Positions 7,915 to 50,803 of a DNA stretch of 64,000 bases are shown piece after piece; position 1 is the stretch's first letter, and the number at the start of each line of letters is the position of its first letter. The translations under genes and the position numbers were made by a program. The stretch is from Chlorokybus atmophyticus. Taxonomy: Eukaryota > Plantae > Mesostigma and Chlorokybus algae. The notes beneath the pieces are model-generated. The model made no database searches and was not told the DNA's origin. It was given only the letters and a program-made list of their open reading frames with translations. The stretch spans positions 1,069,854 to 1,133,853 of the forward strand of contig RHPI01002069.1 in NCBI GenBank assembly GCA_009103225.1. The letters run 5' to 3'.

Positions 7915-8203
7915 CACTGCCCTGGTTGGTCAGTCCGACCGTCCCAAGCCAGAGGCCAGCCCAGCGCGCTTGCGCCATTTTGGGTAAGCGGCTGGCTACC
8001 CTATGCTACGGCATGGGTTCGTGCATGACACACATGCGTTGTGTTTGACGGATGGTCATGGGTGTGGGTGTGCTGTACGTGGTGAGTGCTTGACCGGGAG
8101 CACTCTGCATGTGGAATTACTTTAGTTGGCCAGTGTATGGTTAGCTGCAAGTAGTGCCCACCCCGTTGGCTCATACATAGCAGTGCTACAAGGGAGCAGC
8201 GCC

Positions 8204-8866: not shown

Positions 8867-11043
8867 ACGTACTACAACATACAGCACCACAAGACCTGCA
8901 CGTGCTGCCCAGTCATGCTGCAACACTCAAAGAAGCCCTGCAGCGTCTACTAGCCAACTACCCAACTGCATTGCCGCAAACCCGCAATGCCAGGTTGCTG
9001 ATAGCATGCCCGTTTGCGAATGGCGATGCTGAGGAACTACAGCTACAAAAACTGCTGTCACACCCCTTGCTGCTGGCAACGCTGCCTGCACACCTGCAAG
9101 CACGCCTGGGCCAACCACTAGTGGTATGGCGTTGTAGTCAAACGGTGGGAAGAATGCTGTGCAATCGCACAAGGGAGCTCCTGACATCAACCGCCCTGCA
9201 GCAAGTACACATCATGTCGGCTGCGCAGTGTGTGTGTCAACAACCCAAGTGGAGAACACAGCTGCATGCAGATCTGCATCATGTAGTGAGCTGTGATTAC
9301 AACCGTGTGACATGCTCGGACGTGCTGCGCACCATACTGCAGCGTGGGGCCAAGTTTCGGAGCCAGGTGCCGGCTGACGTCGCCGTGTGTTGGCCAGCAA
9401 TCACATCAGCGGTGTCGAGTTTTGCAAGTGACCTGGAGGAGAAGTGGGGCCAACCTTTCGTGCTACAACAGTGGGTAACAACATTGTTGTCGCTGGTACG
9501 CCAACGTGCGGATGCCATTGCCGCAATGCCTGAGTACCAGAGACAAAGCCAGGCACCAGATACTGTGGCGCCGTGGGATGCTGCAGCTTTGAAGCTCTTG
9601 CACCGTGACTTTATCATTACGGAAGTTGACAAGTGCACCGGCACTCTGGTGGCGGTCTGCAAGAAACATTATTGGCTGTGCTTGACACAAGAGCTGATGA
9701 CAGAGACATATGAACGTGAAGATGCACCAGCCCAAGCAGTGCTGCAACGGCATGCACAATGGAATCAACAGCACAACTACTGTACAGCGAAATTGCGCCA
9801 ACAGCCCAAGCTACCGCACTTGTACCTGTTGTTTAAGCTGCACAAGAATCCGCCTCAGCCGCGCTTCATAGCAGCGGCGCGTGACACTTCGCTGGCGGAT
9901 GCTAGTGTGTGGCTGAGCAGAGGCTATCAATGTATGACACCTATTTGGCATCAGCTGTGGGAGGAAGTAGTGGGACTGCCAGCAATACAGCACAACTGGA
10001 TTATGAAGGATTCAGGCGCTTTTGGGAGACTGCAAACGGCATTGAACACCACACGCACGCTGCGAGACAAGCGCCAGCATTTGGTACTGCGCACTTTTGA
10101 CTTCTCCACCCTGTATACACGCATACGGCACAGCGATTTACTCCAGCGCATGCGCCGCTTGGTAGATGCCACGTTTCACATGCAGCACCAAAGGACCCGT
10201 GCTACACACTTGCACTTGACCGTGAAACAAGATGGCTCCGTACAGCACCATTGGACAGCAGCAGCACAGTACCGAACGGATGAGGAGGGCCATTGGCGAA
10301 CATTCACTGCTGCGTCCATGCATGAAGTACTGGCGTTTGTGTTGGACAACTTGTTTATACGCACGGCGAGTGATGAGCTGTACAAGCAGCGCGTGGGCAT
10401 CCCCATGGGCAATAGTGCGGGCGTACACTTAGCCAACGGAGACTTGTTAACATATGAGTTGGAGTTTATGCAGCGCTTGCGTCAGCAGGGACACGTACAA
10501 CTGTTGCAACAATGTGCCAACGGCATCTTGCGCTACATTGATGATCTGTTTGTCGTGGGAGTACCAGATTTTCAGCAACTGCTGTACATGGATCCGCATG
10601 TGCCCGGAGGAGGCTTGTACCCGCAAGACAGCCTCACCGTCACACAAACAGCTGTGGGTACAAAACTGCCATTTTTGGACTTGGAGGTGTTTCAAACTGA
10701 GGACGGCATCTGCACCAAACTGTACAGTAAACGAGACTTGCCAGCCTACTCCGCTATACCGTGCCACCGCGCGCCGTTGCCAACCTCGAACACCCCACGC
10801 GCTGTGCAGCTGGGTGTCATCAGCTCGCAGTATGCGCGCTTCACCCGCGTTTGCACATACAGAGCACACTTCCTCACAGCCATGACGGACTTATTGCACG
10901 CCATGCAACATGATGGACACCCTTTGAACAAGCTGCTGACTACCCTGAGGCAACGCCTACTGCGCAGCAAGGACTATGTTTACTGTACACCACCAATGCT
11001 GTTGTACATGATGGTGGTGAAGAAAGTCAAGCAGCAACCATAA
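8860..11043 (+). CDS. CxC linker plus reverse transcriptase of the Penelope-like element (different frame from the endonuclease)
   Basis: AQCVCQQP linker, LQRGAKFR, EVDKCTGTLVAVCKKHY, LYLLFKLHKNPPQPRFIA, TFDFSTLYTRI (motif A), QRVGIPMGNSAG (B'), RYIDDL (C), LPFLDL, TKLYSK. The frame is open from 8794 to 11043. Confidence 0.93.
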   Translation: MLNVLQHTAPQDLHVLPSHAATLKEALQRLLANYPTALPQTRNARLLIACPFANGDAEELQLQKLLSHPLLLATLPAHLQARLGQPLVVWRCSQTVGRMLCNRTRELLTSTALQQVHIMSAAQCVCQQPKWRTQLHADLHHVVSCDYNRVTCSDVLRTILQRGAKFRSQVPADVAVCWPAITSAVSSFASDLEEKWGQPFVLQQWVTTLLSLVRQRADAIAAMPEYQRQSQAPDTVAPWDAAALKLLHRDFIITEVDKCTGTLVAVCKKHYWLCLTQELMTETYEREDAPAQAVLQRHAQWNQQHNYCTAKLRQQPKLPHLYLLFKLHKNPPQPRFIAAARDTSLADASVWLSRGYQCMTPIWHQLWEEVVGLPAIQHNWIMKDSGAFGRLQTALNTTRTLRDKRQHLVLRTFDFSTLYTRIRHSDLLQRMRRLVDATFHMQHQRTRATHLHLTVKQDGSVQHHWTAAAQYRTDEEGHWRTFTAASMHEVLAFVLDNLFIRTASDELYKQRVGIPMGNSAGVHLANGDLLTYELEFMQRLRQQGHVQLLQQCANGILRYIDDLFVVGVPDFQQLLYMDPHVPGGGLYPQDSLTVTQTAVGTKLPFLDLEVFQTEDGICTKLYSKRDLPAYSAIPCHRAPLPTSNTPRAVQLGVISSQYARFTRVCTYRAHFLTAMTDLLHAMQHDGHPLNKLLTTLRQRLLRSKDYVYCTPPMLLYMMVVKKVKQQP

Positions 11044-11154
11044 CGCTGACGACACAGTGCATCTGCCGGCGTTACACACTGCTGGACAAGCATCATGCGC
11101 GGGGAGCAAGCTGCATGGTAATAGCAGCTTGCCCGTGCGAAGGACGTGTCACTC

Positions 11155-11685
11155 CAACCCCACCACCCAACCCCACCGCAGCACCTGACTGCCACTGGCA
11201 CCCCAACCCCTAGCACACTGCACTGGCAGGACTAGCGGCATTGAACCACTACTGCCCGTGAGGGCGAGTCGCGGCAGGCATGCCAGCAGTAGCATACTGC
11301 TGACGTAGGCGATGCAACCCTGGCTGCGTCAACAGCAGCACGTAGTGCAAGGAGCGCACGTACTGCAAGCAGGGAGGCGGCAGGAAAGAGGCGGAGAGAG
11401 AGGGAGACAGAGAAGGGGGAGTCCGTCTGCTGTCTGCTACTGCTACCGCTCAGCCTCACCCGGTGCCTAACTGTTTGAATCGCCATTGTGTACAGGTAAC
11501 TACGCATGCATGTTGACTAACGGGGCAAGGGCTTAGCGAAGGTAGCTTCCTAGTATGTATAGGTAGCCCGGTGGTGTAACAAGTTGTGGTTTGCTGGCGT
11601 GTGCGAGTGCGCTTGTGTTTGCATGTGTCATGCATGTGCACAATGCAATGGGGTCACTTGCATAGCATTGCATATACGCTACACA
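11155..11685 (+). repeat. 3' pseudo-LTR of the Penelope-like element
   Basis: Direct repeat of 7385-7914. The ORF track shows near-identical peptides at 7461-7736 and 11232-11507. Confidence 0.92.
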
Positions 11686-19790: not shown

Positions 19791-22700
19791 TAAATGGCGT
19801 TGGACCAAACAGCCGCACCACTAGTTGCCATCGTGTGGTATTATGCGTACTATCATTATGTGGTATAACCTATTTACGATGTGACAAAAGGTTTTTATGA
19901 TATGCATCATTTTATTTTGGACGAGATTGCTCCTCTTCATTGCGATTGCGGTACTTGTCAAGATTTAAGGTAATGTGAGCGTCTTAATGGCATATAATCA
20001 TATGTCGGCCATGTAAGTTATCAATACATAAATCATGTTTATTGTGGTACGTTCAACTATAATACTGGCGAGGTTGGAGTTTTACATATTATGGCTACGA
20101 TATTATTGCTGGATGCATGAGTGTGTTTCGATAAGCAACTCACGTGCGTGTGCACGGCATGGTGTGAATCCATGAGCGTACCTTAAGCTACACGTTATAG
20201 CCTACCATTATTTTCCACACTTATATTATTCGTATACATTTTGCACTGCTTACGTATACCAGCAAGCTATCTTCCACCTACACAAGGTGCCTGCATGCCA
20301 GCCCCTGCCCATGATTTGTGATTTCTTACATTACCTTGCACATGGGAAATTAGCACTGTGGGACTAATTGTTGAGTTTATGGTTGAGTCCATAACTTTGC
20401 CCGCTTGCATGCTATTGCTTGCTTGCTTGCCTGATCTTAATGCTATACCCCATACACGTGTGGCACAGCATGTTAGAAAAGTCCGTCCGGTACGTAGAGT
20501 TGAGTTTTGAATAGAATTGGAGTTTCATGTCTCTCCCGCGTTCGAAGGGTCTTGCACTAAGACCCATCGCGACGGCGCGAGGTAAACCTCCTGCAGCCAA
20601 ATCGGGCGCATGCGGCGGCCGACTCCACTTCAATAAAGAAGTGCAGCATGCACGGGGCAAGCCCTATTGCTTCTGCGCCGGCGGCGGTGGCGCTGGTGTG
20701 CGTCGCCGTCATGCGTCGCTGCCGCGCAGATGCGCATGTCCTACGGCATTGAACCACAGGTTGGCTACGCTCATCGTACGCTAGATTCAGTACTGGATGC
20801 AGCTGCAATTGCTGCTTTCAGCCTGCTTGTGAGCCGCATCTACTGCTTGGAAGTTGTCGCAGCTGCCCGGATGGTCCTGTTATGCGATGGTTGTCTTTGC
20901 TTCGGTCTCTGTGCTACATTGCTTACGCTCTTGTGCAGGCACTCGACTGACATTACGAAGATGTCAACACGGTCAAGCGGAGTCGTCTTTCCCTAATGCT
21001 TTTTCAACGTCTTCAAGCCATCGACCAAAAGTGCCCAGACTTTCCTTCACCACTCGCCTTGCTCAGGTAACAACCATTGCAGGTTGAGGCTGCACATGCA
21101 GGTTGACACTATGTAGCTGTAGTCCCAGTTACATCCATCGAGCATGCATGCCATCCAAAAGATTGCCCAGCTATGCAGTGCAGTGTTGTATAGGATCGTA
21201 TAGGTTTCTGCAGAAACCCTAGCGGTAGTCAGTCATTTCCATATAGGCTGCGTGAGCTATGTTGCCCAACGAGCCGTAGAGACGGGGGTATCTGCATGGC
21301 CTTGCAGTATCCTTTGTGCACATTCGGGCGCCCTGTCGGCTCTCACGGGGGCCGGCTGTCACGGCGTAAAGCCATGCACAAACGTCTCTGATTGACGCCC
21401 GGCAGTCGCAGGCCTTAGGGCCTCCTGCCATCATGGGCGGGGTCGCATATTCCATTGCCGTGGGGAGCAGCTATGCTGCAATTACCCCGTTGGACAAACC
21501 ATGCGACCATCATTTACATCAAACTGTGCCCTTCTGTTCTTTGACTTTGGTGATGCTGAAGTTGAAGCTGCTTGCTGGCAGGATGATGGCATGGCGGCAG
21601 TGCCCGTTTGACGAGGAGGGAGTACTGTGCACATGAAGGCTTCAGGTATGTTTCCTTTGTCGTATATTAGTGTCGCGAGTAAGAGCGCCTGCTCTTCTCT
21701 CTACCTTCTCTGTGTTCTGATGATACAGCATGGGGTATGGGATCCCCAGCGGGCGCAAAGGCATACAGCCTGTTGAGTTGCAGCCGTTTAGTCTCAGTGA
21801 GCGGTTGCTAATTATAGGTTGGGACATAACATACTGTCTCCGCTCTGCAGTTGGCGTTGGGAGCAAGACATCAGTTCCAGTTGGATGACGGCGTGCGACC
21901 TTCATGCTGATGGTGAGTGGCAATGCGACTGTTGTTAATTGGAGTGGTCTGTCAATTGGGTTGGCACCTGTTGTGGAAACGATGACACTTTCCCCAAATG
22001 ATCGACGCTGATTCTAACTATGCGACAATGCCTTCGGGCAAGCCAGTAACCTGATCCATGACCGGTGCCTGATTGCTCTGTGTTGTTTGCGGTCGTATAT
22101 GATGACACTTTAAATCCAACGCTGACTCTTTGTGAGGAGTATTATCACACGAGCTTTTTAAATCTGATACGACCAGTTTGCATAAGACACTGATTCTTGT
22201 CATGGCGTTTGGTATCTTGGGTCGTAAGCAGCTTGTGATGAGCGACCCATCGTTAATATCGCCTAGACCTCATCAGCAACTGCGACGTGCTTTGGCCTGA
22301 TTGATATGACTCTGGCACTACTTATGTTGCGCATATGCTGTATGCAGGTGCTGCAGGAAGGTGTCGCGATGACCACTTGTCAGGTAGCTATCAATGCCAC
22401 GCTTGGGTTGTGTTGGTGCTTCTAATACAGTTGGTACATGGGCTGTCTAGTGTCCTTGCACCCGTTCCCAGAAGCCATATTGTTGCGGTCAGATGGGAAT
22501 TGAAGAGCCTTATCTGGCCATCAAAAGCGCCCGTACCCCGCTATCCCGGCGCGGTCCATACTGCGTCTGGGACGAAGGGTGCGGGACATCTTGCTTTGGT
22601 TCACTTACCATTGCTAGGTGCTCATGCAGGGTTCGCAAGCTTGAATGAGGATTGGCGCATGCAGCTTTTCGCTCAAAGAATCTGCTCATTGCAGGTGTGT

Positions 22701-30850: not shown

Positions 30851-32269
30851 TAGTACAGTCGTAGGTGTTCACGGGTCCTACTGCAGGACCGTGCCAAATC
30901 CCGTTCCCCAATGGTCTAGTTTTTGTCCTACCATTTGCTCATATGCTCAGGAATCCACCGTTCAATTACGAGCCGCGACTCGCCTGCGAACGAGTGGACA
31001 ATAACACCGTGCTGCACGGTTAACACACTGTTAAGCTCACGCACGCTGCACGCTCGTTTGTGACAATGTTTGAAGCAAGTCCCTCAAGCAAGGGACAGCC
31101 TGAAAAAAGCGGCTGGTCTGACACATTGGTACGAGCCAGGCGGCCTTGACGACCCACGCAAGGAGCGAGAGTCATCCTATCAGATGAGGCGGCTTGCAGC
31201 AAGCCGCGTCACTCCACAATGTTTATGCATGCAATGCAAGCCGCAGCAAGCAATAGGCGTTCCTTGCAAGTCGCGAGTGTCATGGGCATGACTCATGCTG
31301 CATGCATGAGTCATGCATGAGCCCAAAAAAGATCCGTCCCCTTCGCTCTGTTCGTCGGATTTGGCCGCCTCATTCGCTCGTGAACACTTTGAAGCGGCTC
31401 GCATCAATTGATGAGCAAGATATCCCCCCCCCGAAGCTACGGCAGCGCGCGGTGGTGCCGTATGATTTCAGCCAATCCGGAGTACGCACTAGACCTCTGA
31501 CAGCGTCTCCTGGTCGCAATTGCTCCTCAGAGGGACCCCTTCGCGCCAGAGAGAGATGCGCTCCCCCAGTTAGTTTCTATGTCCTCCCAACAACGTACGT
31601 GAGCTAAATACCACTGGCACAGTACCAGACTGCCTAGGGTGCAGTAAGCGCGGCGCCCAACGCGCCTCATGAGGTGAAGGTGAGGCTGACGTAGGGAGCC
31701 ATAGATACTGTCTAGCACGGTACATCGTGTACCGTGCCACACTGTACTTTTAGCTAAGCCGACGCATCGCAAGATTCTTTCGGGCCGTATGCGTCCTACG
31801 GACAAGTCGTGTGTCACAAAAGATGCATATTCCTCAGAGTCATACATTCGGGCGGGCAGGTTGCTGCCCAGGACAGCACGCAATTTCGACCGTTAACACC
31901 CGCCTCCTTTGGCGCATCCAGCGGCTACCAGGTGCGTAACGCGTTGCCGCCGTTTGGAGTTAGGCTTTATCTGTCGCAGAGAACCAAACTGTGCAATTGA
32001 TCAGGAGTTCAGGGGAGAGGGCTGGTATCTTTACCATCAACCGCGGCTTACACTGCCTGCACCACGGCGTTTCGTTGTTGGCAGGAGCGTTGTGGGCGGC
32101 GGTGGCGGTGGCCGTGGCGGTGACGGCGTGTGCAGGGTGTTGCCTTAGTATTGCTCGGTGTCGAGGAGCGATAGCCATTCGGTAGCTGCTGCTTGGTCGT
32201 CTGCTGCATAGTCACATCCAGCTTGCTTGGGTTGTTGTTGCTGGCGCTGTGGTGGTAGGCGGCCGCCCC

Positions 32270-34746
32270 ATGTCCAGGTCGGGAGACTCCACCTGTGCGC
32301 TGGCGTCACCTGCGCCCAGCTCCACACCCGGCTCCGCCGGTCTGACCAGAACGGCCAGCGGAAGGCTGAGACGCAAGAGCGGCAGCCTGCAAGGCACCAT
32401 TGATCTAGCCAGGTCAGCATGTCTGACTGGTTGGCCAACTGTTCAGTTGTAAGTTTATACATACTGCGTTGTAAGTTCATGAATACTGTGTTCGTCCCCA
32501 GCAAGCTGGTTTGGTCATACCTCAAGTCGAGTGGCAAGTGGTTGTTAACGTAGCCGATGCCTCGTGACGCCTCATTGTCGTGCATACAGGTGGCGGTCAC
32601 CTGTGCTTGTTTTGCAGATGTTCGTGAACGCTTGCATGGAACAATGCATCACTGGCACATAACGCCAGCACAATGGTGGCATTGCTGATGTCTGTTATTG
32701 TGGTGCTTCAAGTTGCACGCTGGTTCACCAGCTTTCTCATCTAACTGCAGTAACTCAGTAAGCAGTTTGTGCTTGCATGCGTGCAAGCACGTTTGGACTG
32801 GTTACCTCGTTACAACCTTTGCATGCGCTCATGGCACACCATTCTGCAGGTTGGTCAACGACTTGCGGAAGCGTCTTGACGATGCCGGTGTGCTGAAACC
32901 CGAACACGACGACGCAATTCTCAAACGCTTCCTTGCCGCGCGCTCCTTTGATTTGGACAAGGCGGAAGTCATGTTTGTCAACATGGTCAACAGGCGCAAG
33001 GAGTTTGGCACGGACACCATCCTGCAAGTGAGGGCATGCATGTGATGGGTATTGCACAGTGTCCAGCATGTTGTCAGTAGTCGGCATGACCTGTGCGCGC
33101 CCATGCGTTGTCGAGATACAACGCGCTTGCACGTGTGGCTCAACAGCTCGTATCTATGCTAGAGAGCCGGCTTGCAGAATCTTCTGCCATGTACACATGT
33201 GTGCCAGCGTGGGTTACATCTTACTCAATCGTCAATTTCTTGATGTTGTGCATTGCGTGGTAGCTTGCTGCTCACCTGGACTCGCGGTCTGCAGGCTCGA
33301 AGGACTTCCCAATCATCAAAGTCAGTCACATTAGAGGAGCTGCAGCTTCACTTCCACCTTCCCATCAATGAAGTGGCAAGAAAGGTGTGCTGCAGCTTTG
33401 TAGTTGCACGTGTGTCAACGCTTCCTCCTTTGTTAGCAGCTCGCGCATGGCATTGCTGCAGCTGATATGCAATGCGCTTGTGCCTGCAGCTGGGGTTATG
33501 TGTGACTGTGCTCAAGCAACGGTGCCGCGACAACGGAATTGAGCGATGGCCTTATCGCAAGGTCTGTTTGACTGGCATTGACTGCACGCTATGGACTTTG
33601 GTTCAGGACGGCCTGTGCGCAGTTGTCGGGAGCTGACACACAGTTGCCTTCCGCAGGTTCGCAAGCTAGACAAGTTAATAACTGAGCTACAGACCTCACA
33701 TGAGGTGCCTGGCATGGGCAAGTCGCCGGAAGATGTAAGTGCTACCGCGCTTCTGCATTGCTGAATGACAAACCATGCAGTCACACTCCCATAGGCTTTG
33801 CGCCGTGTGCTAATCATGACCACTGGCGCGCGCAGGCCAAGATGAAACTTGACACAGTCAGGGAAACTCGCAATTTCCTTCTCTCAAACCCTAACTCAAC
33901 AGGTACCGTGTCCTGAGCATTGGTTTGGCATCGGTCCTCTGTTGTGCACTACTCACGTATGGTCTTTTGCAGCACATCTGAAGCTAGGCAAAGTGAAGTC
34001 GCCCAGCTCTCGCAGTGTAAAAAGCACATCAAGTCAACCTGACCACCAGTCCAGCCACTCCGGATGCAGCACTCCCACCTCTGGTGTGGAGGACGGGAAC
34101 TTTGCACTTAGTGCGCACAGCCCCGATGAGACTTCCAAAGTGTTTCCTGCCACTCCTCGGCCCATGTATGCTGGCATTAGCAACGCCACCAGGTAGGGGT
34201 CCTTGCTGGTGCTTGAATTGTTGACTTGACGACCAAACTTATGCAAGCAAGACAGGCGTGCTGACTTGGCTTGTCTCTATGTGGTGTAGCGAGCAGGCAA
34301 TAAAGGCGCTTGGCACTCTGCCTGTGCCTTCTCCAACACGGTTCAGCACAAGTGGCCCCCTCTCTGCATTTCGCCCTCCCCACCAAGCCAACACCCTGCA
34401 ATCAGCCATCACCCTACGCACGCCTCCGTGCAGCGCGTCCCCAGCTGTTGTTCCTATGGAATGGAAGGCAGAGCCAGAGTATATTGAGGAACTGCCTGCC
34501 GTTGCGTCGTTGCCGGCCCCTATGCCGCCAATGCCCTTTTTCGTTCCAGCCATGATGCCGCAACATTGGCTGGCTGCGTTCGGTCCCATGGCTATGCAGA
34601 CCATGCCAGGGCTGGCTCATCACATGGCTGCTATGGCACACAGCATGTCAGTGATGAGTCAGTACCAGGGCATGTTTGCTGCACCGTACAGTCCCCACAC
34701 AGATGTAGCCTTTCACCATCTGCACGGGCATGCCCAGCAGCAGTAG
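32270..34746 (+). CDS. RWP-RK transcription factor, predicted to carry SEC14-derived N-terminal exons (CRAL-TRIO N domain)
   Basis: RWP-RK exons VTLEELQLHFHLPINEVARK (33295-33384), LGLCVTVLKQRCRDNGIERWPYRK (33490-33561) and VRKLDKLI, followed by a Ser/Pro/Met-rich tail to 34746. Upstream exons 32270-32412 and 32850-33027 are phase-compatible copies of SEC14 exons 1 and 2. The RWP-RK domain is secure; the fusion is inferred. Confidence 0.75.
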
Positions 34747-34872
34747 CGGAGAGTGCATGAGTAGGCAACTTGGTGATGATGGGTTGCGCGCAAGATCGCA
34801 TGTCATTCACGGGCGTAGCTGGAGGAGCTGAACTGATGCTTGTGAGGTGCGGGGGATGGATGCGGTTCTGCA

Positions 34873-35151
34873 GGCCCTGGCCTTAAGGTGCTGGCGCGTT
34901 TGCCACCTGGACATATGACACTGCAAGGCGCTCACAAGCGGTGGGCTCGCTCAGACCTCTTGAGGCGGCGTCTTGCAATTCGCTGCGTTCTGCTCTGTGC
35001 GTGCGGGGTGGACGACCCCGCCCTTGCGGCCGTCGAGGAGAATGGCAAGCAACTGAAAGCCCTGGACCTGAGCTTCTACTACCGCCAAGAGCTCTCCCCA
35101 AACAACGCGGGGCTTTGGGACCTCGCCTACAGCTGCAGGCCCGGCCTCTAG
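34873..35151 (+). pseudogene. Isolated LRR (F-box/RNI-like) fragment
   Basis: GVDDPALAAVEENGKQLKALDLS...NNAGLWDLAYSC resembles FBXL/SKP2-type cysteine-containing LRRs. No flanking exons were found. Confidence 0.35.
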
Positions 35152-36299
35152 ACTCTGAGACTGTTCAACTTTGCGCCTAGGCAGCCTCAGTCGCTAAACT
35201 CATCATGGATGCGGCATCCACGACGTCATGTACACTGATATATTTTCGGCGGCCACGCTCTCGCTGCCGCCGTTGTGCGCTACGTATGCTTCCTCAAGAA
35301 GGTTGTTGTCATCATGGCGGACACACCGGTCACTGCAGCGGGCGTGCAGGAGGCCGCGCTCTTTGCGGACAGGCAGATCATGAGTGCAAGAGAAAGAGTT
35401 GGCAAGAGACGTGTAGAGTTGTAAATATGTAGATATGTAGACACTCCGCCGCCAATTCTCCCTTCGTCCAACTCCCACGAGCTACCTTGATTTTTGGTTA
35501 ACGGTCTCTGGGTTTTACCATACTCCTTGTCCTTGTCCTGAACAAGCAGCTCCTGACCTTCATTTGGTACTCTTATGCTGTTATGGTTACCATGACTGTG
35601 GCAATGAATTGGCACAGATGTGTGGTGGTTGCCCGTGGACTTGCTGCTAGGCTGTTCATGCTGTTCAGCTCTGCACATACAACAGCTGGTCTTCGACAGT
35701 GACTTGCAAGGACATGGTCACATTAATGTTTAGAAAAGATCATAACAAGTTTTGGCAGTGCGTATGCAGAACTTGACCCGTGGCAGTGCACATGCTCGAG
35801 ACCATGCACGCAAAGCGGTTGATTTGTAGTTCATGCACAGTACATGACGACTTTTGTAGCCGTGTGCCTGTGCATGCACAATACAGGCACTTCAATCATC
35901 TGGCTAGAGGCCACAGCCTGGTGCAGCCTGGTGCAGCCTACGTCAGGACACTAGAGGCAGGTGCACTCACCTTCATCCTGTAGCTGTTGCTGCTAGCAAT
36001 GCGCACAGTTATGTCATATATCCATCTACTACTGCCGCCTCATTTGGCAGCTGAGCCTGACACATCCGCCCCACTTGCACAATTGGTGTCCAACGCTAAC
36101 ACCACACGATGTTACATTGACGCATTATGCAAGAATTACATTAAAAGAGTCACAGGCCGAAGCGCCGTGCAGTTGTTACATTATCGCGCAGCAACCACAG
36201 CTTCGCTGCTTGTGTGGCGCAGTATGCTTACCCTGCAATCATCAAAACACTAGTTAGCTACATGCAACTGCCTCAGGCATGCAGCGACAAAAGCCGTAC

Positions 36300-39200
36300 A
36301 AACCTGCAGGTCTATGAGCTGCTGTTCATGTTGGGCAACTGTTTTTCTGTATTCCTGCGCAAAACCAGCCACATGAGACAAGTTGCGCAAGTGCTGGCAG
36401 GCAGGTGCTGTGTGAACTGCATGCGCACCTCCAGCTTGGCTTCGCACACACTCAGCCGTTTCTGAACATCGTCAACCTGCAGTTGCAGCTGGTACTGTCC
36501 TACGTTTGATGCTTGCCGGCCTGCTTGGAAAGGAACTGAGGGGGTGAACTCGCCGCTAGGCGTGCCAAACTCTGGTGTCCTGTTTGAAAACTGATGTTAC
36601 TGCATGGTGGTAAGCGGTTAAGGTGTGTGCTACGCAGACATGTGGATCGCTAAGGCTGTGCTGTATCTGTATGCTCACTGTGGTTGATTGGCAACCGAAG
36701 ACACAGTTGTGGTACAGATAACAAACCAGTAAAGTAAACGCAAGCCAGCGAGGCAATCTGTTCAAAACTACACCTATGTTCAAAACTGCTGAAAACGTTT
36801 CAAGCAGCACATGGTACTCATAACTCACGGAGCAGCAGCAGCAGCAGCACAACCAGTAATTGGAGCAACACACATGCGTGCCCTTACCCTGGGCGACTCT
36901 GTGACACTGGCGCTGATGATGAAGCATCCCCTGCCATTTGCTGCAAATACACTACGGCTTAGCACCTTCACTAGCGCTGCCAACTGAGTCACAAAGTAAA
37001 ACATGCAATGAAGGCGTCACACACAACCGCAGCGATGCCCTTACGCAATTGTTGGCCTTGCATGAGCAACCTCCATGAACAAGCATGTTGGACGTGACTG
37101 CTGTCATATCGACAATTGAATGCGGAGTTGGGTCAACAACACTCGCAGCTTCACTTACTGAGAGGCCATCCCGCGAAGGAACCCGCAAAGGTTGTAACCG
37201 CAGACTCTTCCTTGCTGCAAACATCGTGTCCGCTTCCAGGGCAGACTTTTGTTCTGGTGACATTGGTGTCGCAGGCTCGTTGGCAGCTGGAGCAGGGAAC
37301 TCCGACTGTCCACTTGCTTGCGTGTCAGGAGCCCGCTGAGCTTCGCCATTTACATCGGGTTGCTGTTGCTGCTCAGCGGCAGGTTGTTCGTCTGACTTGC
37401 GCTGCATAGTCACTGGCATGAATGTTGGTTCAAGCTGAGCAATGCATAGGAAACTTGGCCTCAAGTACATATGAAACGGATGGAGCTGATGTGCATTTAC
37501 ACAGAAAGTGAAGGGAGATAATGATGCAGCGATGGTCATACCTCCCATGGCTTAGGGAAATCACGCCATGGTCCTGGCTCGCAAGCCAAACAATCACCCC
37601 CAGGACAAACACAGGTGCCACCCAAGAACTGTGGCAAGGCACTGCCAGCACAGATCACGCATAAGCATCCTTCAGAGGCTTCGTACAAAGTGCAGCTGGG
37701 CAAAGTTGCAACTCGCACAAAAAATAACTTCATCACATTGTACCCACCTTTCATCAACATACTCCAGGAGCGCCTTCTTGTAATCTTTGCCATGCACCTC
37801 GATCTTTGAGGCTGTCTTCGGGTCTATCCATGGCTTGACGATGGACCAAACTTGCTTGAAAGTCCATGGGACGTTGATGATGAACATCTTGAACAGCGTC
37901 TGATACAGGGATGCCCGTTAGCGCAGATGCGCTCAGTATGCTGATATGAGCAACAACTTCTGCCAGCAAACACACTACCTCCGGGTAGTAATCAGCATCA
38001 ACTTGCAAGATATACTTCAAAAACTTGCTGCCCTCCTTGTAGAACTTCAAGATGCCCTGCCGAGCAGATGCATGTGTAAGTGAGACAAGCTTACTTGTAC
38101 AAGGCAAAGTCCAAGGGCTGCAGGATGCGAGGAATGTACAGAAGAAGACCTGATTGCCTTCAAAATCTAGAACAGTGAAGGACTTGTCAATGTTGTGCCC
38201 TACAGCCTGACTGGCAGCAGGCCACTTCCATTGGAGCAGCTTCTCCCACTCATATACATGATTTCGCAGCATACGTTCCATGTTTGTGACCTGCACACCA
38301 AGACATGTCATCACTGCTTGGGCGCTTGGACGATATGTTCAGTATGCGTACACACAGTGCAGTGAGTATGAAAACAGGCGCACAAGCACCTCCATAAGCT
38401 GCTTGACTTTGAGTTGACCAAGCTTTTCAATGTACACCGGATGACCCCACTTGTCCGTGTTATGATGACCATGAGGGTACAACTCCATCACCTTCTTCAT
38501 CTCTGGAAAATCAAAATCCTGCACAGCCACACATCCACAAATCATCACCCTCTAACTCTGTTTCAGCGGACTTGCCAATGCTTCAGCGAACGAGCACGCA
38601 TACGTCAGGTTCATTACATGCAACACGCTGACCACTGTACAAGGTGCATGCGCTTGAGAACAACGCGAAGACAGTGCATGCATGTACTCACATGCAGGAT
38701 AGTATCCGTGCCGAACTCCTTGCGCCAGTTGACCATGTTGACAAACATGACTTCTGCCTTGTCCAAGTCAAAGGCGCGCGCGGCAAGGAAGCGTTTGAGA
38801 AGCGAGTCATCGTGTTCAGGTTTCAGTACGCCGGCAGCTTCAAGCCGCTTGCGCAAATCGCCGACCAACCTGCAAGGTGGTAGGCCGTGTGTTGTGACGA
38901 ACCAAGCACTCAACCATTGAAGTGCTTGCATGCATGCACACGGTGACAACCAAAACACTCGCCACATTGGCACGTGACAGCTGGGATCCTAAACTGGTGG
39001 AGTCCGTGTGCAAACAGGGCTCCCCTTGCAACCATAAGATGACATGCAAGTCAGCAGTAAGAGCTATGAAAACATGCATCCGCCACCGTTTCAGCAGTTG
39101 TGCGCAATAAGTACAAGACCCACTAATAACGCACCGGCTACCGCATGATACAATGCAATCTGACCTACAATCAACCCAGCGTGCTGTAATCCAAGTGTGC

Positions 39201-39428
39201 TGCAGTAACGAACTGGACAGTAACTGCACAGCCGGCATGACAAATGTGAGAAGTCGGTTTAACAATCGTCCAAATTGATACGGACCTTCCCAGATCCACT
39301 GAACCCTGAAGGCTGTTGCCGCTCCTGCGTCTTAGCCTTCCGCTGGCCGTTCTTATCAGGCCGGAGCTGGGCGTTGGGCTGGGCTCCGGGGTCGCCAGCC
39401 CACCAGCATAGTCTTCTAATCTGGACAT
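36300..39428 (-). CDS. SEC14: SEC14/CRAL-TRIO phosphatidylinositol transfer protein with coiled-coil C-terminal extension (3' end uncertain, may reach ~35200)
   Basis: DDSLLKRFLAARAFDLDKAEVMFVNMVNWRKEFGTDTI, YPHGHHNTDKWGHPVYIEKLG, HVYEWEK, DADYYPE, MFIINVPWTFKQVWSIVKPWIDPKTASKIEV, LPQFLGGTCVCPGGDCL...GPW. Confidence 0.9.
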
Positions 39429-40014
39429 GGGAGCGGCCGACTGGGCCTACCACCACCGCGCCAGCAATAGTCTAAGTAGCAAGCTGGATGTGACAGCACC
39501 GGACCAAGCAGCTGGCGAACAACTATCACTGCACGACTACAGGGACAGGCAACAACCTGCAAACAACGTCACCTCCACCGCCACTGCCACCGCCACCGCC
39601 GCCACCACCCACAGCCCTCCCGCAAACCTGCCAGCTACGACACTCCGTGCGCCAGACTAGACGCCCGCGTGCCCGCGGCGGCGGCGGCGGTGGGAACGGA
39701 GGAGGACTAGGAGCAGGTTGGGCTAAACGAGGCAGAAGCAGCACTGACGCTTACGCTTGCACACAGTGTTCTGCGGCCAGCTCTCTTTCCCGTTTGAAAC
39801 TCTGGGCCCGATATCAGTGCTGTGATCTGATCGATACGCGGGCCGCGTGAATTTCTCGTTGATGCGAGCTTTGCAAGTTGCAACTCGTCAACATAGAGTT
39901 GCTTGCCTGCTTGTGCTCTTATGCTTTGCATAGGGTAGAGTACCAGGGCCATTAGAGAACAAGCAGCACAGCACAGCACAAACTCCTCATTGAGGCAAGC
40001 TAGCACCAGCACAA

Positions 40015-40154
40015 GCATGTTGTTGGTCTTGCAATGCTATACCCTATCTGTGTGAGAGGCTCTTGCAAGCATTGCATGCAGCGACGTGCATGCCATGCGA
40101 GGTAAGTGTAGCCTCACACAGATAGGGTATAGCATTGCAAGACCTACAACATGC
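40015..40154. repeat. Long inverted repeat (42-bp arms, 1 mismatch), miRNA-precursor-like or small foldback element
   Basis: GCATGTTGTTGGTCTTGCAATGCTATACCCTATCTGTGTGAG (40015-40056) pairs with CTCACACAGATAGGGTATAGCATTGCAAGACCTACAACATGC (40113-40154). Confidence 0.85.
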
Positions 40155-47269: not shown

Positions 47270-48604
47270 ATGGCACTCAGACGGCGTCTGCTGGCTGTGG
47301 CTGCGCAGGCAGCCACATCCAGCTTTGGCTCCGTCGCCGCTGTCGCCGCCCCCGCCGCTGCTCCCCTCTCCCGCGTTGCTGCGTTACAAGCCCAAGCAGC
47401 TGCAGCTGTTGCTCCAGCCCTGAATGTTAGGAGGCCCTATGCTACTACGGCTGCGGCGCAGGATCCACTGCCCCCGCAGCACCGGAATGTTATGATTTTG
47501 GAGAACCGTGTTCCTTTGGTTGCACCCGACGCATGGGTGAGTGGTGGTTGTAAAACACTTCAGCAATCAGTAGTTTGTCGATCAGCAGTGAGATGGAACT
47601 TCGTTGCATGTGCATGTACTGTAGTTGTGTCATGCGAGTTGGAGCTCAATAGTAACAATCTGCAACGTATGTTTGAACTGCTCTCATTTCAATGACTTTA
47701 TGGTCTGATATCTATGCATTTGCGCAGATTGCGCCAAACGCTACAGTTGTTGGCGATGTGGACGTGTACGACCGCTCCACCATCTGGTATGGAGCTGTGC
47801 TGAGGGGTGACTTGAACCACATTCATGTGGGCGGCTTTTCATCCATTCTCGAGCGCGTCATGGTGCATGCGGCGGAGTCCAACCCCACCGGCTTGTCTGC
47901 CGCAACCTCAATTGGCAACTATGTGACCATCGGTGCACGATCAGTCCTGCGCTCAGTAGACATTGGCAATGAGGTAGGCAGTGTGTTTGATGCTGTGTTC
48001 ACTCCGTTTGCCAGAAGTAGCACCCTTTGGTTGATTGTTAAGGGGTATCCTGTTAACCAGCAACAAATCACATGCATTTTTGGATGCAAGTTGTGCATGT
48101 CAGCTCAACCTTCAAATCCACGCAAATCGCTTGCAGTCATCACATCGCGTGCCCTCGTCACACCTTTGCACCTACATGTGTCGTTGTTGTGTGCGGTGTT
48201 GAGACAGCATTTTCACTTGGTCTGCAACAGGTCATTGTTGGCGCTGGCTCTATCGTCATGGAAGGTGTGATCATTGAATCACAAAGCGTGTTGGCGGCTG
48301 GCACAGTTGTTCCTCCAGGCCGCTTGATCCCGAGTGGCCAGCTTTGGGCTGGCAATCCTGCGAGGTATTGAAAAGCACGTTTATCTGGTGTGTTACAGTT
48401 GCAACTTCACATCTAGAAGTTTAATGCTAGATGCTTCTTGCCAGGTATGTCCGTGACCTGACCTATGACGAGAAGGCCGAGATTATCGACATAGCTGAGT
48501 CGCTTTCGCGAGTAGCAGTCCAGCACTGGTCAGAGTTTCTGCCGTACAGCTTCGCATACATACAGGCAGAAGCGTTGCGAAAAGCGCTTGCCCCGATGGC
48601 TTGA
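47270..48604 (+). CDS. Mitochondrial complex I gamma carbonic anhydrase-like subunit (gamma-CAL)
   Basis: Presequence, then IAPNATVVGDV..IWYGAVLRGDLNHIHVG..VHAAESNPTGLSAATSIGNYVTIG, VVPPGRLIPSGQLWAGNPARYVRDLT, SEFLPYSFAY. The PTGL insertion and SEFLPY are CAL-type features. Confidence 0.9.
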
Positions 48605-49639
48605 ACGGTTTAGCACAATACGAAGTGCACTTGGTTCCATGCGACACCAACAAGCCCTGCATACCCTCCGCGATGTTGCAGATGGTGCACAAACTTCTAA
48701 CCCATCAGATTATGGGTCGTCTGCGATTGTATTGGTTGCCATTGGGGCTAGTGTCTGATATTGGTATCCTAGGTATTGCTGCATTTAATTGCAAATATAT
48801 TGTTTCAAGTTGCAGCATGTTTAACAATGCAGTGATATCACAATACACTAGCCCAAGGTTCTGTGATAATGCAGATGCTGTGGAAACCGGTAGCATTGTG
48901 CTATATCCGAGCTGGTACCTAATGTTGGTATGCGACACATCGCTTGCATGTATGAAAGCAATATGGGGTTGACATGCATTTGCAGTTTCCGTATCACCAT
49001 GGGGACACAATCAATCCCTTATGTCACACAAGCATGACAAGGGGGCGGTAGTGATAGGGGTAGCGGCAGTGGGTAGATAGCATGCAGGCGCATGCCTTAG
49101 CCCGGTGGTTAAATTGGTCTGTAATTGTTGTGGTTTTCGCATTGCATGTTTATGTAGATCTGCATGTACGGATTCCTCCTTGCATCTTTTATACACCCTC
49201 CTTCAACATTGCTCCTTCAACACTCGGTAAAGTAGCTATATGGCAAGTGGGTACTTGCGTATCATATCACGCCATATTTAAAGGGTATTTTAGCAAGGTT
49301 TGATGCATGGTTCATGGGGCGTTATGGCATGATTATCATGTTAACAACATGACAGACACATGATGTTTTATGCGAACGAGACATCGACAATCCTGCGCTC
49401 GTTCAAGTGCGTAATAATTTTTATTTTCAACCATTGAATATAGGTACTCATCCTCAACATATGAGTTACAATATAAGCAATGTAGTTATATTTATACCTA
49501 AATCTATACCTATATCTATATTCATATTTATATTATTTATATATATCGAAATTTATATATATACTTGCATTTACATTTATATATATATATATATAGCTTT
49601 ATATAGTTATATTTTGAATTATATATACTTGTATATATT

Positions 49640-49922
49640 NNNNNNNNNNNNNNNNNNNNNNNNNNNNNNNNNNNNNNNNNNNNNNNNNNNNNNNNNNNNN
49701 NNNNNNNNNNNNNNNNNNNNNNNNNNNNNNNNNNNNNNNNNNNNNNNNNNNNNNNNNNNNNNNNNNNNNNNNNNNNNNNNNNNNNNNNNNNNNNNNNNNN
49801 NNNNNNNNNNNNNNNNNNNNNNNNNNNNNNNNNNNNNNNNNNNNNNNNNNNNNNNNNNNNNNNNNNNNNNNNNNNNNNNNNNNNNNNNNNNNNNNNNNNN
49901 NNNNNNNNNNNNNNNNNNNNNN
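49640..49922. other. Assembly gap flanked by TA-rich low-complexity sequence
   Basis: Run of Ns with (TA)n on both sides. Confidence 0.99.
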
Positions 49923-50803
49923 TATATATATATATATATATACCTTTAACTTTGTACCCCATACATAAGATTGAGTAATCTCTCACCGAATGTGTACACC
50001 CTTAGATGGCGTATACGAACAAGAGTACAGCAAAGACAAATAAACATGCAATGATTGCGTTTATAACTGTTGCGTTTGTTGTTATCCACTATTGCATAAG
50101 TTCAATACAAAGAGCGGATGTGCAACAAAACGTTTTCATTCATATCTTACCTTGCGCCTCATATTTGCTCACATGCGTAAAGCATTGCTTATTATATGAG
50201 ATAAATACAACATAAGGTGTATAATCTACAATAAAGCATCTATTGTAGAAAAAGCAATAAAGCAAGGCTGTACAACCAATTCCTATTGTACAGCAGGGAC
50301 TAAGCAGAGACACAAGACAAGACAGGGGGCAGTACAATAGCATATAATCTACATTACGGACAGCACTAGCGCACACCATGCACACGCGCAATCGCCGCGT
50401 ATAATTAACCGCAGAGGGCGGGCAAACCACTCTCAACTGTAATGACCAAGCCATCTACTAGCGGCTCACACAATGCACATGTGCAATAACGCCGTAGGCT
50501 ATGCACCGTAATGCTGTAGCTATAATCAACCACAAAGGGCGCTCCACATCAATGAGAAAGACGTTTTTCGATGGCTCACTATGTGCAAATCATTGTTCCT
50601 ACGCACATAGCTGAGCGATATGCGTATGTGCAAATGCATGTAAACCAATGCCTAAAGCATACGAGCGCATAAGCGCATTGCTCTATGCTTATGTCATGCA
50701 TATGCCATATCATGCAAATTATAATGTTAAGTTTTATCAATAGATATAAAAACCAACCCACATAATTAGCCTTCATATCGGTGTTATTTTTTGACAAGTA
50801 AGT

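What the first reader, a model, noticed from the sequence alone, without database searches (positions are those of the whole stretch)
32060..34746. Candidate chimeric gene: SEC14 lipid-transfer N-terminus grafted onto an RWP-RK transcription factor
Seen in sequence: 32060-33030 is an inverted copy of the 5' UTR, exon 1 and exon 2 of the SEC14 gene about 6 kb away (38693-39640, minus strand), with the intron positions kept, so this is a DNA-level duplication. Exon 1 reads MSRSGDSTCALASPAPSSTPGSAGLTRTASGRLRRKSG versus MSRLEDYAGGLATPEPSPTPSSGLIRTASGRLRRRSG, with only frame-preserving indels. Exon 2 is 51/59 aa identical, with roughly a dozen synonymous changes by hand count and no stops, while intron 1 has diverged; this suggests purifying selection. 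The exon 2 donor (CAA|gtgagg, 33027) is phase 0 and matches the acceptor ctgcag|GCT at 33295, giving one ORF: CRAL-TRIO-N helices, RWP-RK domain, then an activation-like tail. Established: RWP-RK factors control mating type, gametogenesis and nitrogen responses in green plants, and CRAL-TRIO-N is part of SEC14 lipid-transfer proteins. Inference: a lineage-specific TF that captured SEC14 5' regulatory sequence and possibly a membrane-associating module. I do not recall this architecture being described.
Basis: partly seen in the sequence, partly recalled or inferred. Interest (0 to 1): 0.85.

Follow-up and report, generated by a model that had tools for sequence, protein, structure and literature searches.

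The report
SEC14 head fused to RWP-RK factor
In the streptophyte alga Chlorokybus, a copy of the first two exons of a neighbouring SEC14 lipid-transfer gene replaced the three-codon first exon of a conserved RWP-RK transcription factor, and RNA from two independent studies shows the fused gene is spliced and expressed.

Summary
Window 32042-33110 (+) is an inverted DNA-level copy of the 5'UTR, exon 1, intron 1, exon 2 and the start of intron 2 of the SEC14/SFH-type gene at 35840-39680 (-).

- **RNA:** Spliced contigs from two independent studies join the copied exon 2 (donor 33027) to the RWP-RK exon at 33295. All seven introns are GT..AG.
- **Reading frame:** The result is one 434-aa frame that starts at the first AUG (32270).
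- **Domains:** Pfam finds CRAL_TRIO_N (exon 2) and RWP-RK (exons 3-4). The lipid-binding CRAL_TRIO domain is absent.
- **Ancestral state:** In 16 relatives, from Mesostigma to prasinophytes, the RWP-RK domain lies within about 15 residues of Met1. The Cymbomonas gene has a 3-codon first exon and then a phase-0 intron at exactly the position of the 33295 acceptor. The SEC14 module therefore replaced a mini-exon by phase-0/phase-0 exon shuffling.
- **Selection:** Exon 2 has dN/dS 0.16, and neutral drift of the copy is rejected (P about 0.001). An invariant SEC14 tryptophan has become arginine.
- **Prior record:** The organism is Chlorokybus (JGI Chlat1). The public model Chrsp17S02558 already carries both domains, with a wrong 3' end, but I found no paper describing the architecture.
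- **Not supported:** Promoter capture and membrane association remain untested.

The scan has not reported this fusion elsewhere.

The parts
32042..32105 (+). 5' edge of the duplicated SEC14 segment, upstream of the known transcript end
   Evidence: About 72% identity to parent 39598-39680 in alignment A1. blastn homology starts at 32095. No similarity further upstream.
32106..32269 (+). 5'UTR of the chimeric mRNA (SEC14-derived), with no upstream ATG
   Evidence: RNA contig X1 record 1 starts at 32106. There is no ATG in 31900-32269 and there is an in-frame stop upstream.
32270..32412 (+). Coding exon 1 (SEC14-derived): disordered N-terminus with a basic Ser-rich motif (RTASGRLRRKSGS)
   Evidence: Junction 32412/32850 is seen in two runs. 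It is 76% nt identical to parent exon 1 with dN/dS 0.28. The motif aligns with the N-termini of plant SFH proteins.
32413..32849 (+). Intron 1: position inherited from SEC14, sequence diverged
   Evidence: GT..AG ends, spliced in RNA. 51% identity to the parent intron.
32850..33027 (+). Coding exon 2 (SEC14-derived): CRAL_TRIO_N helices, ending in phase 0
   Evidence: Pfam PF03765 scores 29.7 bits against a cut-off of 23. 88% nt and 51/59 aa identity to the parent, dN/dS 0.16. Aligns with Sec14p 1AUA residues 32-91. AF2 predicts three helices, 46-59, 69-78 and 83-100.
33028..33294 (+). Hybrid intron 2: SEC14 intron-2 sequence up to about 33110, then sequence of the RWP-RK gene's ancestral first intron or 5' region
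   Evidence: Identity to parent intron 2 runs 78%, 67%, 63% up to 33110, then 25%. GT..AG ends, spliced in two runs.
33295..33384 (+). Exon 3: first half of the RWP-RK domain. The acceptor is the ancestral intron-1 acceptor
   Evidence: Pfam RWP-RK profile positions 1-21. Same start and same 30-aa length as Cymbomonas exon 2.
33490..33561 (+). Exon 4: second half of the RWP-RK domain (ERWPYRK)
   Evidence: Pfam PF02042 scores 47.2 bits against a cut-off of 29.3. The junction is seen in RNA.
33657..33734 (+). Exon 5
   Evidence: RNA junctions. Frame open.
33836..33902 (+). Exon 6: conserved ETRNFLLSNPNST motif of this RWP-RK clade
   Evidence: RNA junctions. Conserved in alignment A3.
33973..34192 (+). 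Exon 7: AHLKLGK motif, then a Ser-rich tail
   Evidence: RNA junctions. Alignment A3.
34290..34746 (+). Exon 8 coding part: Pro/Met/Ala/His/Gln-rich tail, stop at 34744-34746
   Evidence: RNA contigs run unspliced over 34288-35629. Frame shown. No Pfam family.
34747..35629 (+). 3'UTR (at least this far)
   Evidence: X1 record 1 ends at 35629 with 0 mismatches. TGTAA at 35420.
35840..39680 (-). Parent SEC14/SFH-type gene (JGI Chrsp17S02783, P0019, 492 aa), convergent with the chimera. ATG at 39428, exon 1 39286-39428, exon 2 38692-38869
   Evidence: RNA contig X1 record 2. Pfam CRAL_TRIO_N plus CRAL_TRIO. Best homologues are plant SFH phosphatidylinositol/phosphatidylcholine transfer proteins.

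Best explanation
This is a real, expressed chimeric gene in Chlorokybus (genome strain CCAC 0220, JGI Chlat1). It encodes a 434-aa RWP-RK transcription factor whose first 107 residues come from the neighbouring SEC14/SFH-type lipid-transfer gene.

**Origin (largely shown).** A segment of about 1.07 kb was copied in inverted orientation. It runs from about 60 nt upstream of the present transcript end to about 80 nt into SEC14 intron 2. It landed just upstream of, or in the first intron of, the RWP-RK gene. That gene originally had a 3-codon first exon followed by a phase-0 intron. SEC14 exon 2 also ends in phase 0, so the hybrid intron (33028-33294) splices the two in frame. This is classical intron-mediated exon shuffling that replaced the ancestral mini-exon.

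**How it works (inferred).** The protein is a DNA-binding RWP-RK factor and the orthologue of the Mesostigma gene. Translation of its DNA-binding domain now depends on the SEC14-derived AUG. It carries a disordered basic Ser-rich stretch and a three-helix CRAL_TRIO_N bundle, joined by a flexible linker to the RWP-RK domain. This head has been kept by purifying selection, so it most likely acts as a regulatory or protein-interaction handle. It is unlikely to bind lipid, because the lipid pocket (CRAL_TRIO) is missing and an invariant SEC14 tryptophan has been lost.
For: - **RNA.** X1 record 1 (2352 nt, 0 mismatches) spans 32106-32409 | 32847-33027 | 33295-33382 | ... | 34288-35629. X2 record 3, from another study eight years earlier, independently joins exon 1, exon 2 and exon 3. 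All joints are GT..AG, and the contigs carry the copy-specific letters at the 22 sites where the parent differs.
- **Frame.** 8 exons, 1305 nt, no stops. The ATG at 32270 is the first ATG, with an in-frame stop upstream. The retained intron has no in-frame ATG ahead of 33295.
- **Domains.** CRAL_TRIO_N 29.7 bits and RWP-RK 47.2 plus 23.3 bits per exon. On the public model P0001, RWP-RK scores 81 bits at 117-165 and CRAL_TRIO_N 25.1 bits at 65-92.
- **Ancestral state.** Of 18 hits to the RWP-RK region (17 with the Pfam RWP-RK domain), only P0001 has PF03765. In all 16 aligned relatives the domain starts right after Met1.
- **Cymbomonas gene L001.** Exon 1 is ATG GCT AAG, followed by a phase-0 intron. 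Its exons of 30 aa, 24 aa and 22 aa plus 1 nt match Chlorokybus exons 3, 4 and 6.
- **Orthology.** P0001 is sister to the Mesostigma protein (97/93 support) with the shorter branch, 0.19 against 0.35.
- **Breakpoints.** No SEC14 relic lies beyond about 33110.
- **Selection.** Exon 2 has dN/dS 0.16 (Fisher P 8e-5). If the copy were neutral, about 22 replacements would be expected on its branch, against 9 observed in total (P 0.001).
- **Structure.** AF2 gives three helices at pLDDT 70-90, a linker at 106-112 with pLDDT below 50, and an RWP-RK region at about 95. Foldseek's best hits are AtSFH5 and Sec14p over 61-72 columns.
Against: - The RNA data are assembled contigs, not raw or long reads. 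Each junction is shown, but a single full-length molecule, the transcription start and minor isoforms are not.
- There is no protein-level evidence.
- dN/dS rests on 59 codons and two sequences. It cannot be split by branch because the outgroups are too distant, and gene conversion between the inverted copies would bias it.
- The invariant Trp has become Arg, so the helical bundle may not fold as it does in SEC14.
- The AF2 model of the head rests on an alignment only one sequence deep.
- The role of the head is inference only.
Confidence: 0.82

Rival explanations
1. The fusion matters only as a replacement of the 5'UTR and start codon, and perhaps the promoter. The 107-residue head is a tolerated passenger with no function of its own.
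For: - The head lacks the lipid-binding domain.
- It has lost an invariant SEC14 tryptophan.
- Its first 25 codons evolve faster, with dN/dS 0.41.
- AF2 gives a flexible linker and no fixed contact with the RWP-RK domain (pTM 0.47).
Against: - Exon 2 has dN/dS 0.16, and a neutral copy is rejected at P about 0.001.
- Apart from the lost Trp, every residue that is invariant or nearly so in the SEC14 set and was still present in the parent is also kept in the copy.
- The RTASGRLRRKSG motif is nearly identical in both copies although dS is 0.7 in that exon.
Confidence: 0.2
2. This is a two-promoter gene. An ancestral-type short isoform starts inside the hybrid intron (33111-33294), uses a relic mini-exon and is the main functional product. 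The SEC14-headed isoform is secondary.
For: - A candidate relic exists: an ATG at 33197, four codons, then a GTGGGT donor. That leaves an 86-nt intron, typical for this gene, in phase 0 with 33295.
- Contigs drop rare variants (tool note).
Against: - No contig in either run covers 33067-33263.
- The assembled forms in both studies carry the exon 2-exon 3 junction.
- Many ATG...GT combinations arise by chance in this stretch.
Confidence: 0.1
3. It is a transcribed but non-functional chimera, that is, a decaying pseudogene or splicing noise.
For: Lineage-specific chimeras are often short-lived (general knowledge). There is no protein evidence here.
Against: - The frame is intact over 8 exons although dS between the copies is 0.43-0.72.
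- The RWP-RK part is the slower-evolving of the Chlorokybus/Mesostigma pair.
- It is the only Chlorokybus member of this clade found.
- The stop lies in the last exon, so nonsense-mediated decay is not expected.
Confidence: 0.04
4. It is an artefact of genome or transcriptome assembly.
For: Both copies share 31-mers in principle. Logan contigs are short-read assemblies.
Against: - The chimera's contigs match the window with 0 mismatches across exon 2, where the parent differs at 22 sites. The parent's contig is separate (record 2, 21 mismatches).
- The junctions fall on canonical GT..AG sites.
- Two studies agree.
- The independent JGI gene model has the same first seven exons.
Confidence: 0.02

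Closest known systems
Orthologous 'N-terminal RWP-RK' clade: Mesostigma viride Mv26583 (P0002), Mesotaenium ME000748S09284 (P0003), Netrium, Cymbomonas CYMTET_9465 (P0147) and MMETSP prasinophytes
   Same: - RWP-RK domain 55-67% identical.
- Shared downstream ETRxFLLSNPNSxAHLKxGK motif and a low-complexity tail.
- Conserved intron positions.
- Sister to the Mesostigma protein.
   Different: In all of them the domain starts within about 15 residues of Met1, and none has CRAL_TRIO_N. The Chlorokybus protein has 107 extra residues in front.
SEC14/SFH-type phosphatidylinositol transfer proteins: parent Chrsp17S02783 (P0019), AtSFH5 (PDB 7Y11) and yeast Sec14p (PDB 1AUA)
   Same: - Residues 1-107 are 77% identical to the parent.
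- They include the SFH N-terminal basic Ser-rich stretch and the three helices matching Sec14p residues 32-91.
   Different: There is no CRAL_TRIO lipid-binding domain, and the invariant Trp (119/119 homologues) is Arg. It is therefore not a lipid-transfer protein.
NIN-like proteins (NLPs): RWP-RK plus PB1 with an N-terminal regulatory region
   Same: An RWP-RK domain preceded by a regulatory-looking N-terminal region. In NLP7 that region carries a phosphoserine that controls nuclear retention (my own knowledge, not tested here).
   Different: No PB1 and no GAF-like region. The head has a different and recent origin.
Volvocine MID/VSR1 RWP-RK factors
   Same: Regions outside the RWP-RK domain mediate homo- and heterodimerisation (PMC10629530). 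This is a precedent for an N-terminal interaction module on an RWP-RK factor.
   Different: The domains are unrelated in sequence. In MID and VSR1 the RWP-RK domain is C-terminal.
Chimeric genes made by partial DNA duplication and intron-phase-compatible exon shuffling (the general class; Drosophila examples such as jingwei are from my own knowledge)
   Same: - A partial paralogous copy with its introns.
- A breakpoint inside an intron.
- A phase 0/0 join.
- An expressed fused frame, with selection on the recruited part.
   Different: Here the recruited part replaces a 3-codon first exon of a transcription factor whose ancestral structure can be read from distant relatives. The donor and the chimera remain neighbours in a tail-to-tail arrangement.

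Membership tests
RWP-RK transcription factors (Pfam PF02042) | Complete RWP-RK domain with the RWPxRK motif | tested here: met
   81 bits at residues 117-165 of P0001 (cut-off 29.3). Per exon, 23.3 plus 47.2 bits. The ERWPYRK motif is in exon 4.
RWP-RK transcription factors (Pfam PF02042) | Sequence-specific DNA binding and nuclear location | not testable with these tools
   Needs DAP-seq or EMSA, and localisation.
N-terminal RWP-RK clade (Mesostigma, Mesotaenium, Cymbomonas and relatives) | Orthology by tree, the shared NPNSxAHL motif and shared intron positions | tested here: met
   Sister to the Mesostigma protein with 97/93 support. The motif is conserved. The first, second, third and fifth Cymbomonas exon boundaries fall at the same positions.
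N-terminal RWP-RK clade (Mesostigma, Mesotaenium, Cymbomonas and relatives) | RWP-RK domain within about 15 residues of Met1 | tested here: not met
   The domain starts at residue 117 because of the SEC14-derived head. This is the derived state.
SEC14 / CRAL-TRIO lipid-transfer proteins | CRAL_TRIO lipid-binding domain (PF00650) | tested here: not met
   Absent from every exon and from P0001. No relic of SEC14 exons 3 onwards is found in the DNA.
SEC14 / CRAL-TRIO lipid-transfer proteins | CRAL_TRIO_N helical region (PF03765) | tested here: met
   29.7 bits for exon 2 alone (cut-off 23). Aligns with Sec14p residues 32-91 at E 6e-10. The invariant Trp is replaced by Arg.
NIN-like proteins (NLP) | C-terminal PB1 domain and an N-terminal GAF-like region | tested here: not met
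   Pfam finds only CRAL_TRIO_N and RWP-RK.
Chimeric gene by DNA-level partial duplication (exon shuffling) | Recruited part is a paralogous copy with intron positions kept, and the breakpoint lies in an intron | tested here: met
   Homology covers 32042-33110, and intron 1 is at the same codon position.
Chimeric gene by DNA-level partial duplication (exon shuffling) | Fused mature transcript with one open frame | tested here: met
   Junctions in two independent runs. A 1305-nt frame.
Chimeric gene by DNA-level partial duplication (exon shuffling) | Selection acting on the recruited part within the chimera lineage | tested here: inconclusive
   Pairwise dN/dS is 0.16 and the neutral-copy test gives P 0.001. 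No branch-specific estimate was possible.

The most novel reading that the evidence does not exclude
The SEC14-derived head puts an RWP-RK transcription factor under the same post-translational control as its SEC14/SFH parent. The same kinase, a 14-3-3-type or other partner, or an acidic-lipid surface would recognise the conserved basic Ser-rich motif and helical bundle. This would link membrane or phosphoinositide signalling directly to transcription in one of the earliest-branching streptophytes. It would be a naturally evolved, tethered or signal-gated RWP-RK factor.
Probability: 0.12. Interest if true: 0.75.

Novelty: new variant of a known kind. Interest (0 to 1): 0.52.

Why it matters
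- **Mechanism.** This is a clean case of new-gene formation by exon shuffling in an alga near the base of the streptophytes. The donor, the breakpoints, the intron phases and the ancestral state (a 3-codon first exon conserved since the chlorophyte/streptophyte split) can all be read from sequence.
- **RWP-RK biology.** RWP-RK factors control nitrogen responses, gamete identity and the egg-to-embryo transition in the green lineage. This is a natural experiment in which a clade with the DNA-binding domain at the very N-terminus acquired a selected 107-residue head.
- **Annotation.** The public model Chrsp17S02558 has a wrong 3' end. Its 508 aa should be 434 aa.
- **Limits.** It is a single-lineage event and the biological role of the head is unknown.

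Tried and rejected
- **Polarising exon 2 changes.** I used 119 SEC14 homologues to assign the 8 replacements in exon 2 to a branch. The outgroups are too distant, and only W96R could be assigned to the chimera.
- **Combined alignment for AF2.** An alignment of SEC14 heads plus RWP-RK relatives (A4) failed, because MAFFT placed the SEC14 pieces on the RWP-RK region. I used A5 instead, with the parent as the only SEC14 row.
- **ESM Atlas feature search.** No usable hit.
- **The look-up of encoding contigs.** Nothing on record for P0001 and the Mesostigma protein P0002, so the closest relative's gene structure could not be read. Cymbomonas was used instead.
- **Relic mini-exon.** The search inside the hybrid intron gives one attractive candidate (33197-33208) among many chance ATG...GT combinations, so it does not count as evidence.
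- **Literature.** No paper holds both RWP-RK and CRAL-TRIO. Papers holding both Chlorokybus and RWP-RK exist, but going by titles and abstracts alone (I did not open them) none appears to concern this gene.
- **Promoter capture.** No similarity lies upstream of about 32042, and the parent's transcription start could not be read from contigs.
- **Foldseek.** The RWP-RK region had no confident match in solved structures.
- My own joined 434-aa model was never sent to any search tool. Exons were searched one by one by reference, and whole-protein analyses used the public protein P0001 that a tool returned. P0001 is identical over residues 1-428. Its last 80 residues are a model artefact, and the true last 6 residues of the protein plus the 10 before them were searched only as part of exon 8. 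Exons 1 and 2 were joined once in a local script for a frame check.
Full report
**1. The observation**

The window holds two inverted homologous blocks.
- The repeat finder gives arms 32830-33042 / 38677-38889 (213 nt, 86% complementary) and 32337-32384 / 39317-39364 (48 nt, 90%).
- A pairwise alignment (A1) and local blastn place the homology at about 32042-32415 (5' flank, 5'UTR, exon 1) and 32845-33042 (end of intron 1, exon 2, start of intron 2).
- Nothing else is shared between the two genes, and there is no third copy in the window.

Identity by segment is 73% for the flank and UTR, 76% for exon 1, 51% for intron 1 (about random), 88% for exon 2 and 63-78% for the first 80 nt of intron 2. 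It then falls to 25% after 33110. The intron sits at the same codon position in both copies, so this is a DNA-level duplication.

**2. Is it one gene?**

The single reads search returned four runs whose contigs lack introns at GT..AG boundaries, so they are transcriptomes.
- In run X1 (study of 2021), one 2352-nt contig lies on the window with no mismatch as 32106-32409 | 32847-33027 | 33295-33382 | 33488-33559 | 33655-33734 | 33836-33899 | 33970-34190 | 34288-35629.
- In run X2 (a different study, 2013), a 333-nt contig independently joins exon 1, exon 2 and 69 nt of exon 3. A second contig covers exon 3 to 35254.
- The parent SEC14 transcript is a separate contig. It shows 21 mismatches where it cross-maps on the copied exon 2. 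It continues on the opposite strand to 35840, so the two genes are convergent, with contig ends 210 bp apart.
- No contig covers 33067-33263.

These are contigs. They prove each junction, but they do not prove a full-length molecule, a start site or the absence of minor isoforms.

**3. The reading frame**

After adjusting the joints to GT..AG there are eight coding exons: 32270-32412, 32850-33027, 33295-33384, 33490-33561, 33657-33734, 33836-33902, 33973-34192 and 34290-34746. They total 1305 nt, which is 434 codons plus a stop. Each exon is open in its phase.

There is no ATG between 31900 and 32269, and an in-frame stop lies upstream, so 32270 is the first AUG of any transcript that starts within 370 nt. 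Read straight through, the hybrid intron has a stop and no in-frame ATG ahead of 33295. The next in-frame Met lies beyond the RWP-RK domain. The DNA-binding domain can therefore be made only from the SEC14-derived start, unless an unseen mini-exon is used (section 8).

**4. Domains**

Searched exon by exon, exon 2 passes Pfam CRAL_TRIO_N (29.7 bits, cut-off 23). Exons 3 and 4 carry the two halves of RWP-RK (23.3 and 47.2 bits, cut-off 29.3). The other exons match nothing. The parent has CRAL_TRIO_N plus CRAL_TRIO.

Exon 2 aligns with yeast Sec14p (1AUA) residues 32-91 of 296 (E 6e-10). That is only the N-terminal helices and none of the lipid pocket.

An AlphaFold2 model of residues 1-232 (alignment A5, only one sequence deep for the head) gives the following:
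- a disordered exon 1 part (pLDDT about 54);
- three helices at 46-59, 69-78 and 83-100 (pLDDT 70-90);
- a low-confidence linker at 106-112, exactly at the exon 2/3 join;
- a confident RWP-RK region (pLDDT about 95) followed by two conserved helices.

Foldseek's best solved matches are AtSFH5-Sec14 and Sec14p over 61-72 columns.

**5. Organism and public record**

A HMMER search of 1.8 billion representatives with the last exon found one protein, P0001 (508 aa). It is EukProt EP00898 Chlorokybus atmophyticus, JGI Chlat1 model Chrsp17S02558. The sequenced strain CCAC 0220 is now called C. melkonianii (PMC8611356).

P0001 has the same fused N-terminus and is stored with PF03765 plus PF02042. Its last 80 residues come from a predicted intron that skips the stop at 34744. 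The RNA contigs run unspliced through that region, so the real protein has 434 residues.

No paper in the library holds both 'RWP-RK' and 'CRAL-TRIO'.

**6. Ancestral state and mechanism of origin**

A search with the RWP-RK region found 18 proteins, including P0001 itself, and 17 of them carry the Pfam RWP-RK domain. The relatives come from Mesostigma, Mesotaenium, Netrium, Cymbomonas and marine prasinophyte transcriptomes. Only P0001 has CRAL_TRIO_N. In the 16 aligned relatives the domain begins within about 15 residues of Met1: residues 6-54 in Mesostigma and 14-62 in Mesotaenium.

In a maximum-likelihood tree the Chlorokybus protein is sister to the Mesostigma one (97/93 support). It has the shorter branch, 0.19 against 0.35. 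So it is the orthologue, and its RWP-RK part is well conserved.

The Cymbomonas gene could be read in genomic DNA (L001).
- Exon 1 is ATG GCT AAG, followed by a phase-0 intron.
- Exon 2 (30 aa, TRRPAHSSKS...VARK) has the same start and length as Chlorokybus exon 3 (ARRTSQSSKS...VARK).
- The next exon (24 aa) and the fifth (22 aa plus 1 nt) match Chlorokybus exons 4 and 6 in length. The boundary after the fourth falls at the same aligned position as in Chlorokybus.

The acceptor at 33295 is therefore the ancestral acceptor of intron 1. SEC14 exon 2 ends in phase 0, and the SEC14-derived part of the hybrid intron ends near 33110.

The simplest history is this. An inverted copy of about 1.07 kb of the neighbouring SEC14 gene was inserted ahead of, or into, the RWP-RK gene's first intron or 5' region. 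Splicing from the SEC14 exon 2 donor to the old intron-1 acceptor then replaced a 3-codon exon by 107 codons.

**7. Selection and age**

- **Exon 2:** 13 synonymous and 9 non-synonymous differences, dS 0.43, dN 0.069, dN/dS 0.16 (Fisher P 8e-5).
- **Neutral-copy test:** If the copy had drifted neutrally, about 22 replacements would be expected on its branch alone, against 9 observed on both branches (Poisson P 0.001).
- **Exon 1:** dS 0.72 and dN/dS 0.28. The first 25 codons are looser (0.41), and the basic Ser-rich stretch RTASGRLRRKSGS is tight (0.16). That stretch aligns with the conserved 'SLKKK..RRSS' region of plant SFH N-termini.
- **Conserved residues:** Apart from one Trp, every residue that is invariant or nearly so in the homologue set and was still present in the parent is also kept in the copy. 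The exception is a Trp that is invariant in 119/119 homologues and is Arg in the chimera. That fits release from contacts that exist only in a full SEC14 fold.
- **Age:** dS of 0.4-0.7 is far above the distances among Chlorokybus species (up to about 0.09 in a different, concatenated measure; crown about 76 Ma, PMC8611356). The fusion is probably older than the genus crown. This is inference, and their transcriptomes can test it.

**8. What remains open**

- **Promoter.** Similarity ends about 60 nt upstream of the known transcript end. The chimera may use a core promoter that came with the fragment, or the RWP-RK gene's own older promoter upstream of the insertion.
- **Short isoform.** A candidate relic mini-exon sits in the hybrid intron: ATG at 33197, four codons, a GTGGGT donor and an 86-nt intron. 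It could give an ancestral-type isoform, but such combinations are frequent by chance and no contig supports it.
- **Function of the head.** Lipid transfer is excluded because the pocket is missing. Membrane association is unsupported. A regulatory or interaction role is the best guess. There is precedent in RWP-RK factors whose non-DNA-binding regions mediate dimerisation (PMC10629530).

**9. Verdict**

This is a genuine, expressed, selected chimeric gene and a new domain architecture for RWP-RK factors. It arose by a known mechanism, exon shuffling after partial duplication. It is already present in a public automated gene model but is, as far as I could find, undescribed. Interest is moderate: the anatomy is very clean and the lineage is phylogenetically important, but it is a single-lineage event whose biological role is unknown.

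Noticed in passing
window 34690-35150: The public gene model Chrsp17S02558 (P0001, 508 aa) splices past the stop at 34744 and adds 80 residues from what RNA contigs show to be unspliced 3'UTR. Those residues match no Pfam family. The model's 3' end should be corrected to 434 aa.
   Followed up: yes
window 33197-33208: A possible relic of the ancestral mini-exon lies inside the hybrid intron: an ATG, four codons and a GTGGGT donor, leaving an 86-nt phase-0 intron to 33295. It is at chance level, and no RNA contig covers it.
   Followed up: partly
window 21973-22173 (+): Two adjacent C/D-box snoRNA genes above Rfam gathering scores: snoZ103 (57.3 bits) and SNORD36 (40.8 bits), 34 nt apart.
   Followed up: no
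window 40015-40154: A near-perfect inverted repeat (42-nt arms, 98% complementary, 56-nt spacer) lies about 300 nt upstream of the SEC14 parent's duplicated 5' region. It could be a hairpin or a MITE-like element.
   Followed up: no
window 48001-50000: A sharp drop in G+C to 0.36, against a window mean of 0.51.
   Followed up: no
same scaffold, outside the finding (protein P0023, JGI Chrsp17S02773): A second, more distant SEC14 paralogue (361 aa, 46% identical to the parent) is annotated on the same scaffold, about 29 gene numbers away.
   Followed up: no
window 32446-32492: A 22-nt unit repeated 2.1 times inside intron 1 of the chimera and absent from the parent intron.
   Followed up: no
window 7371-11685: Earlier first-stage notes place a Penelope-like retroelement here, downstream of a centrin gene. 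I did not examine it.
   Followed up: no
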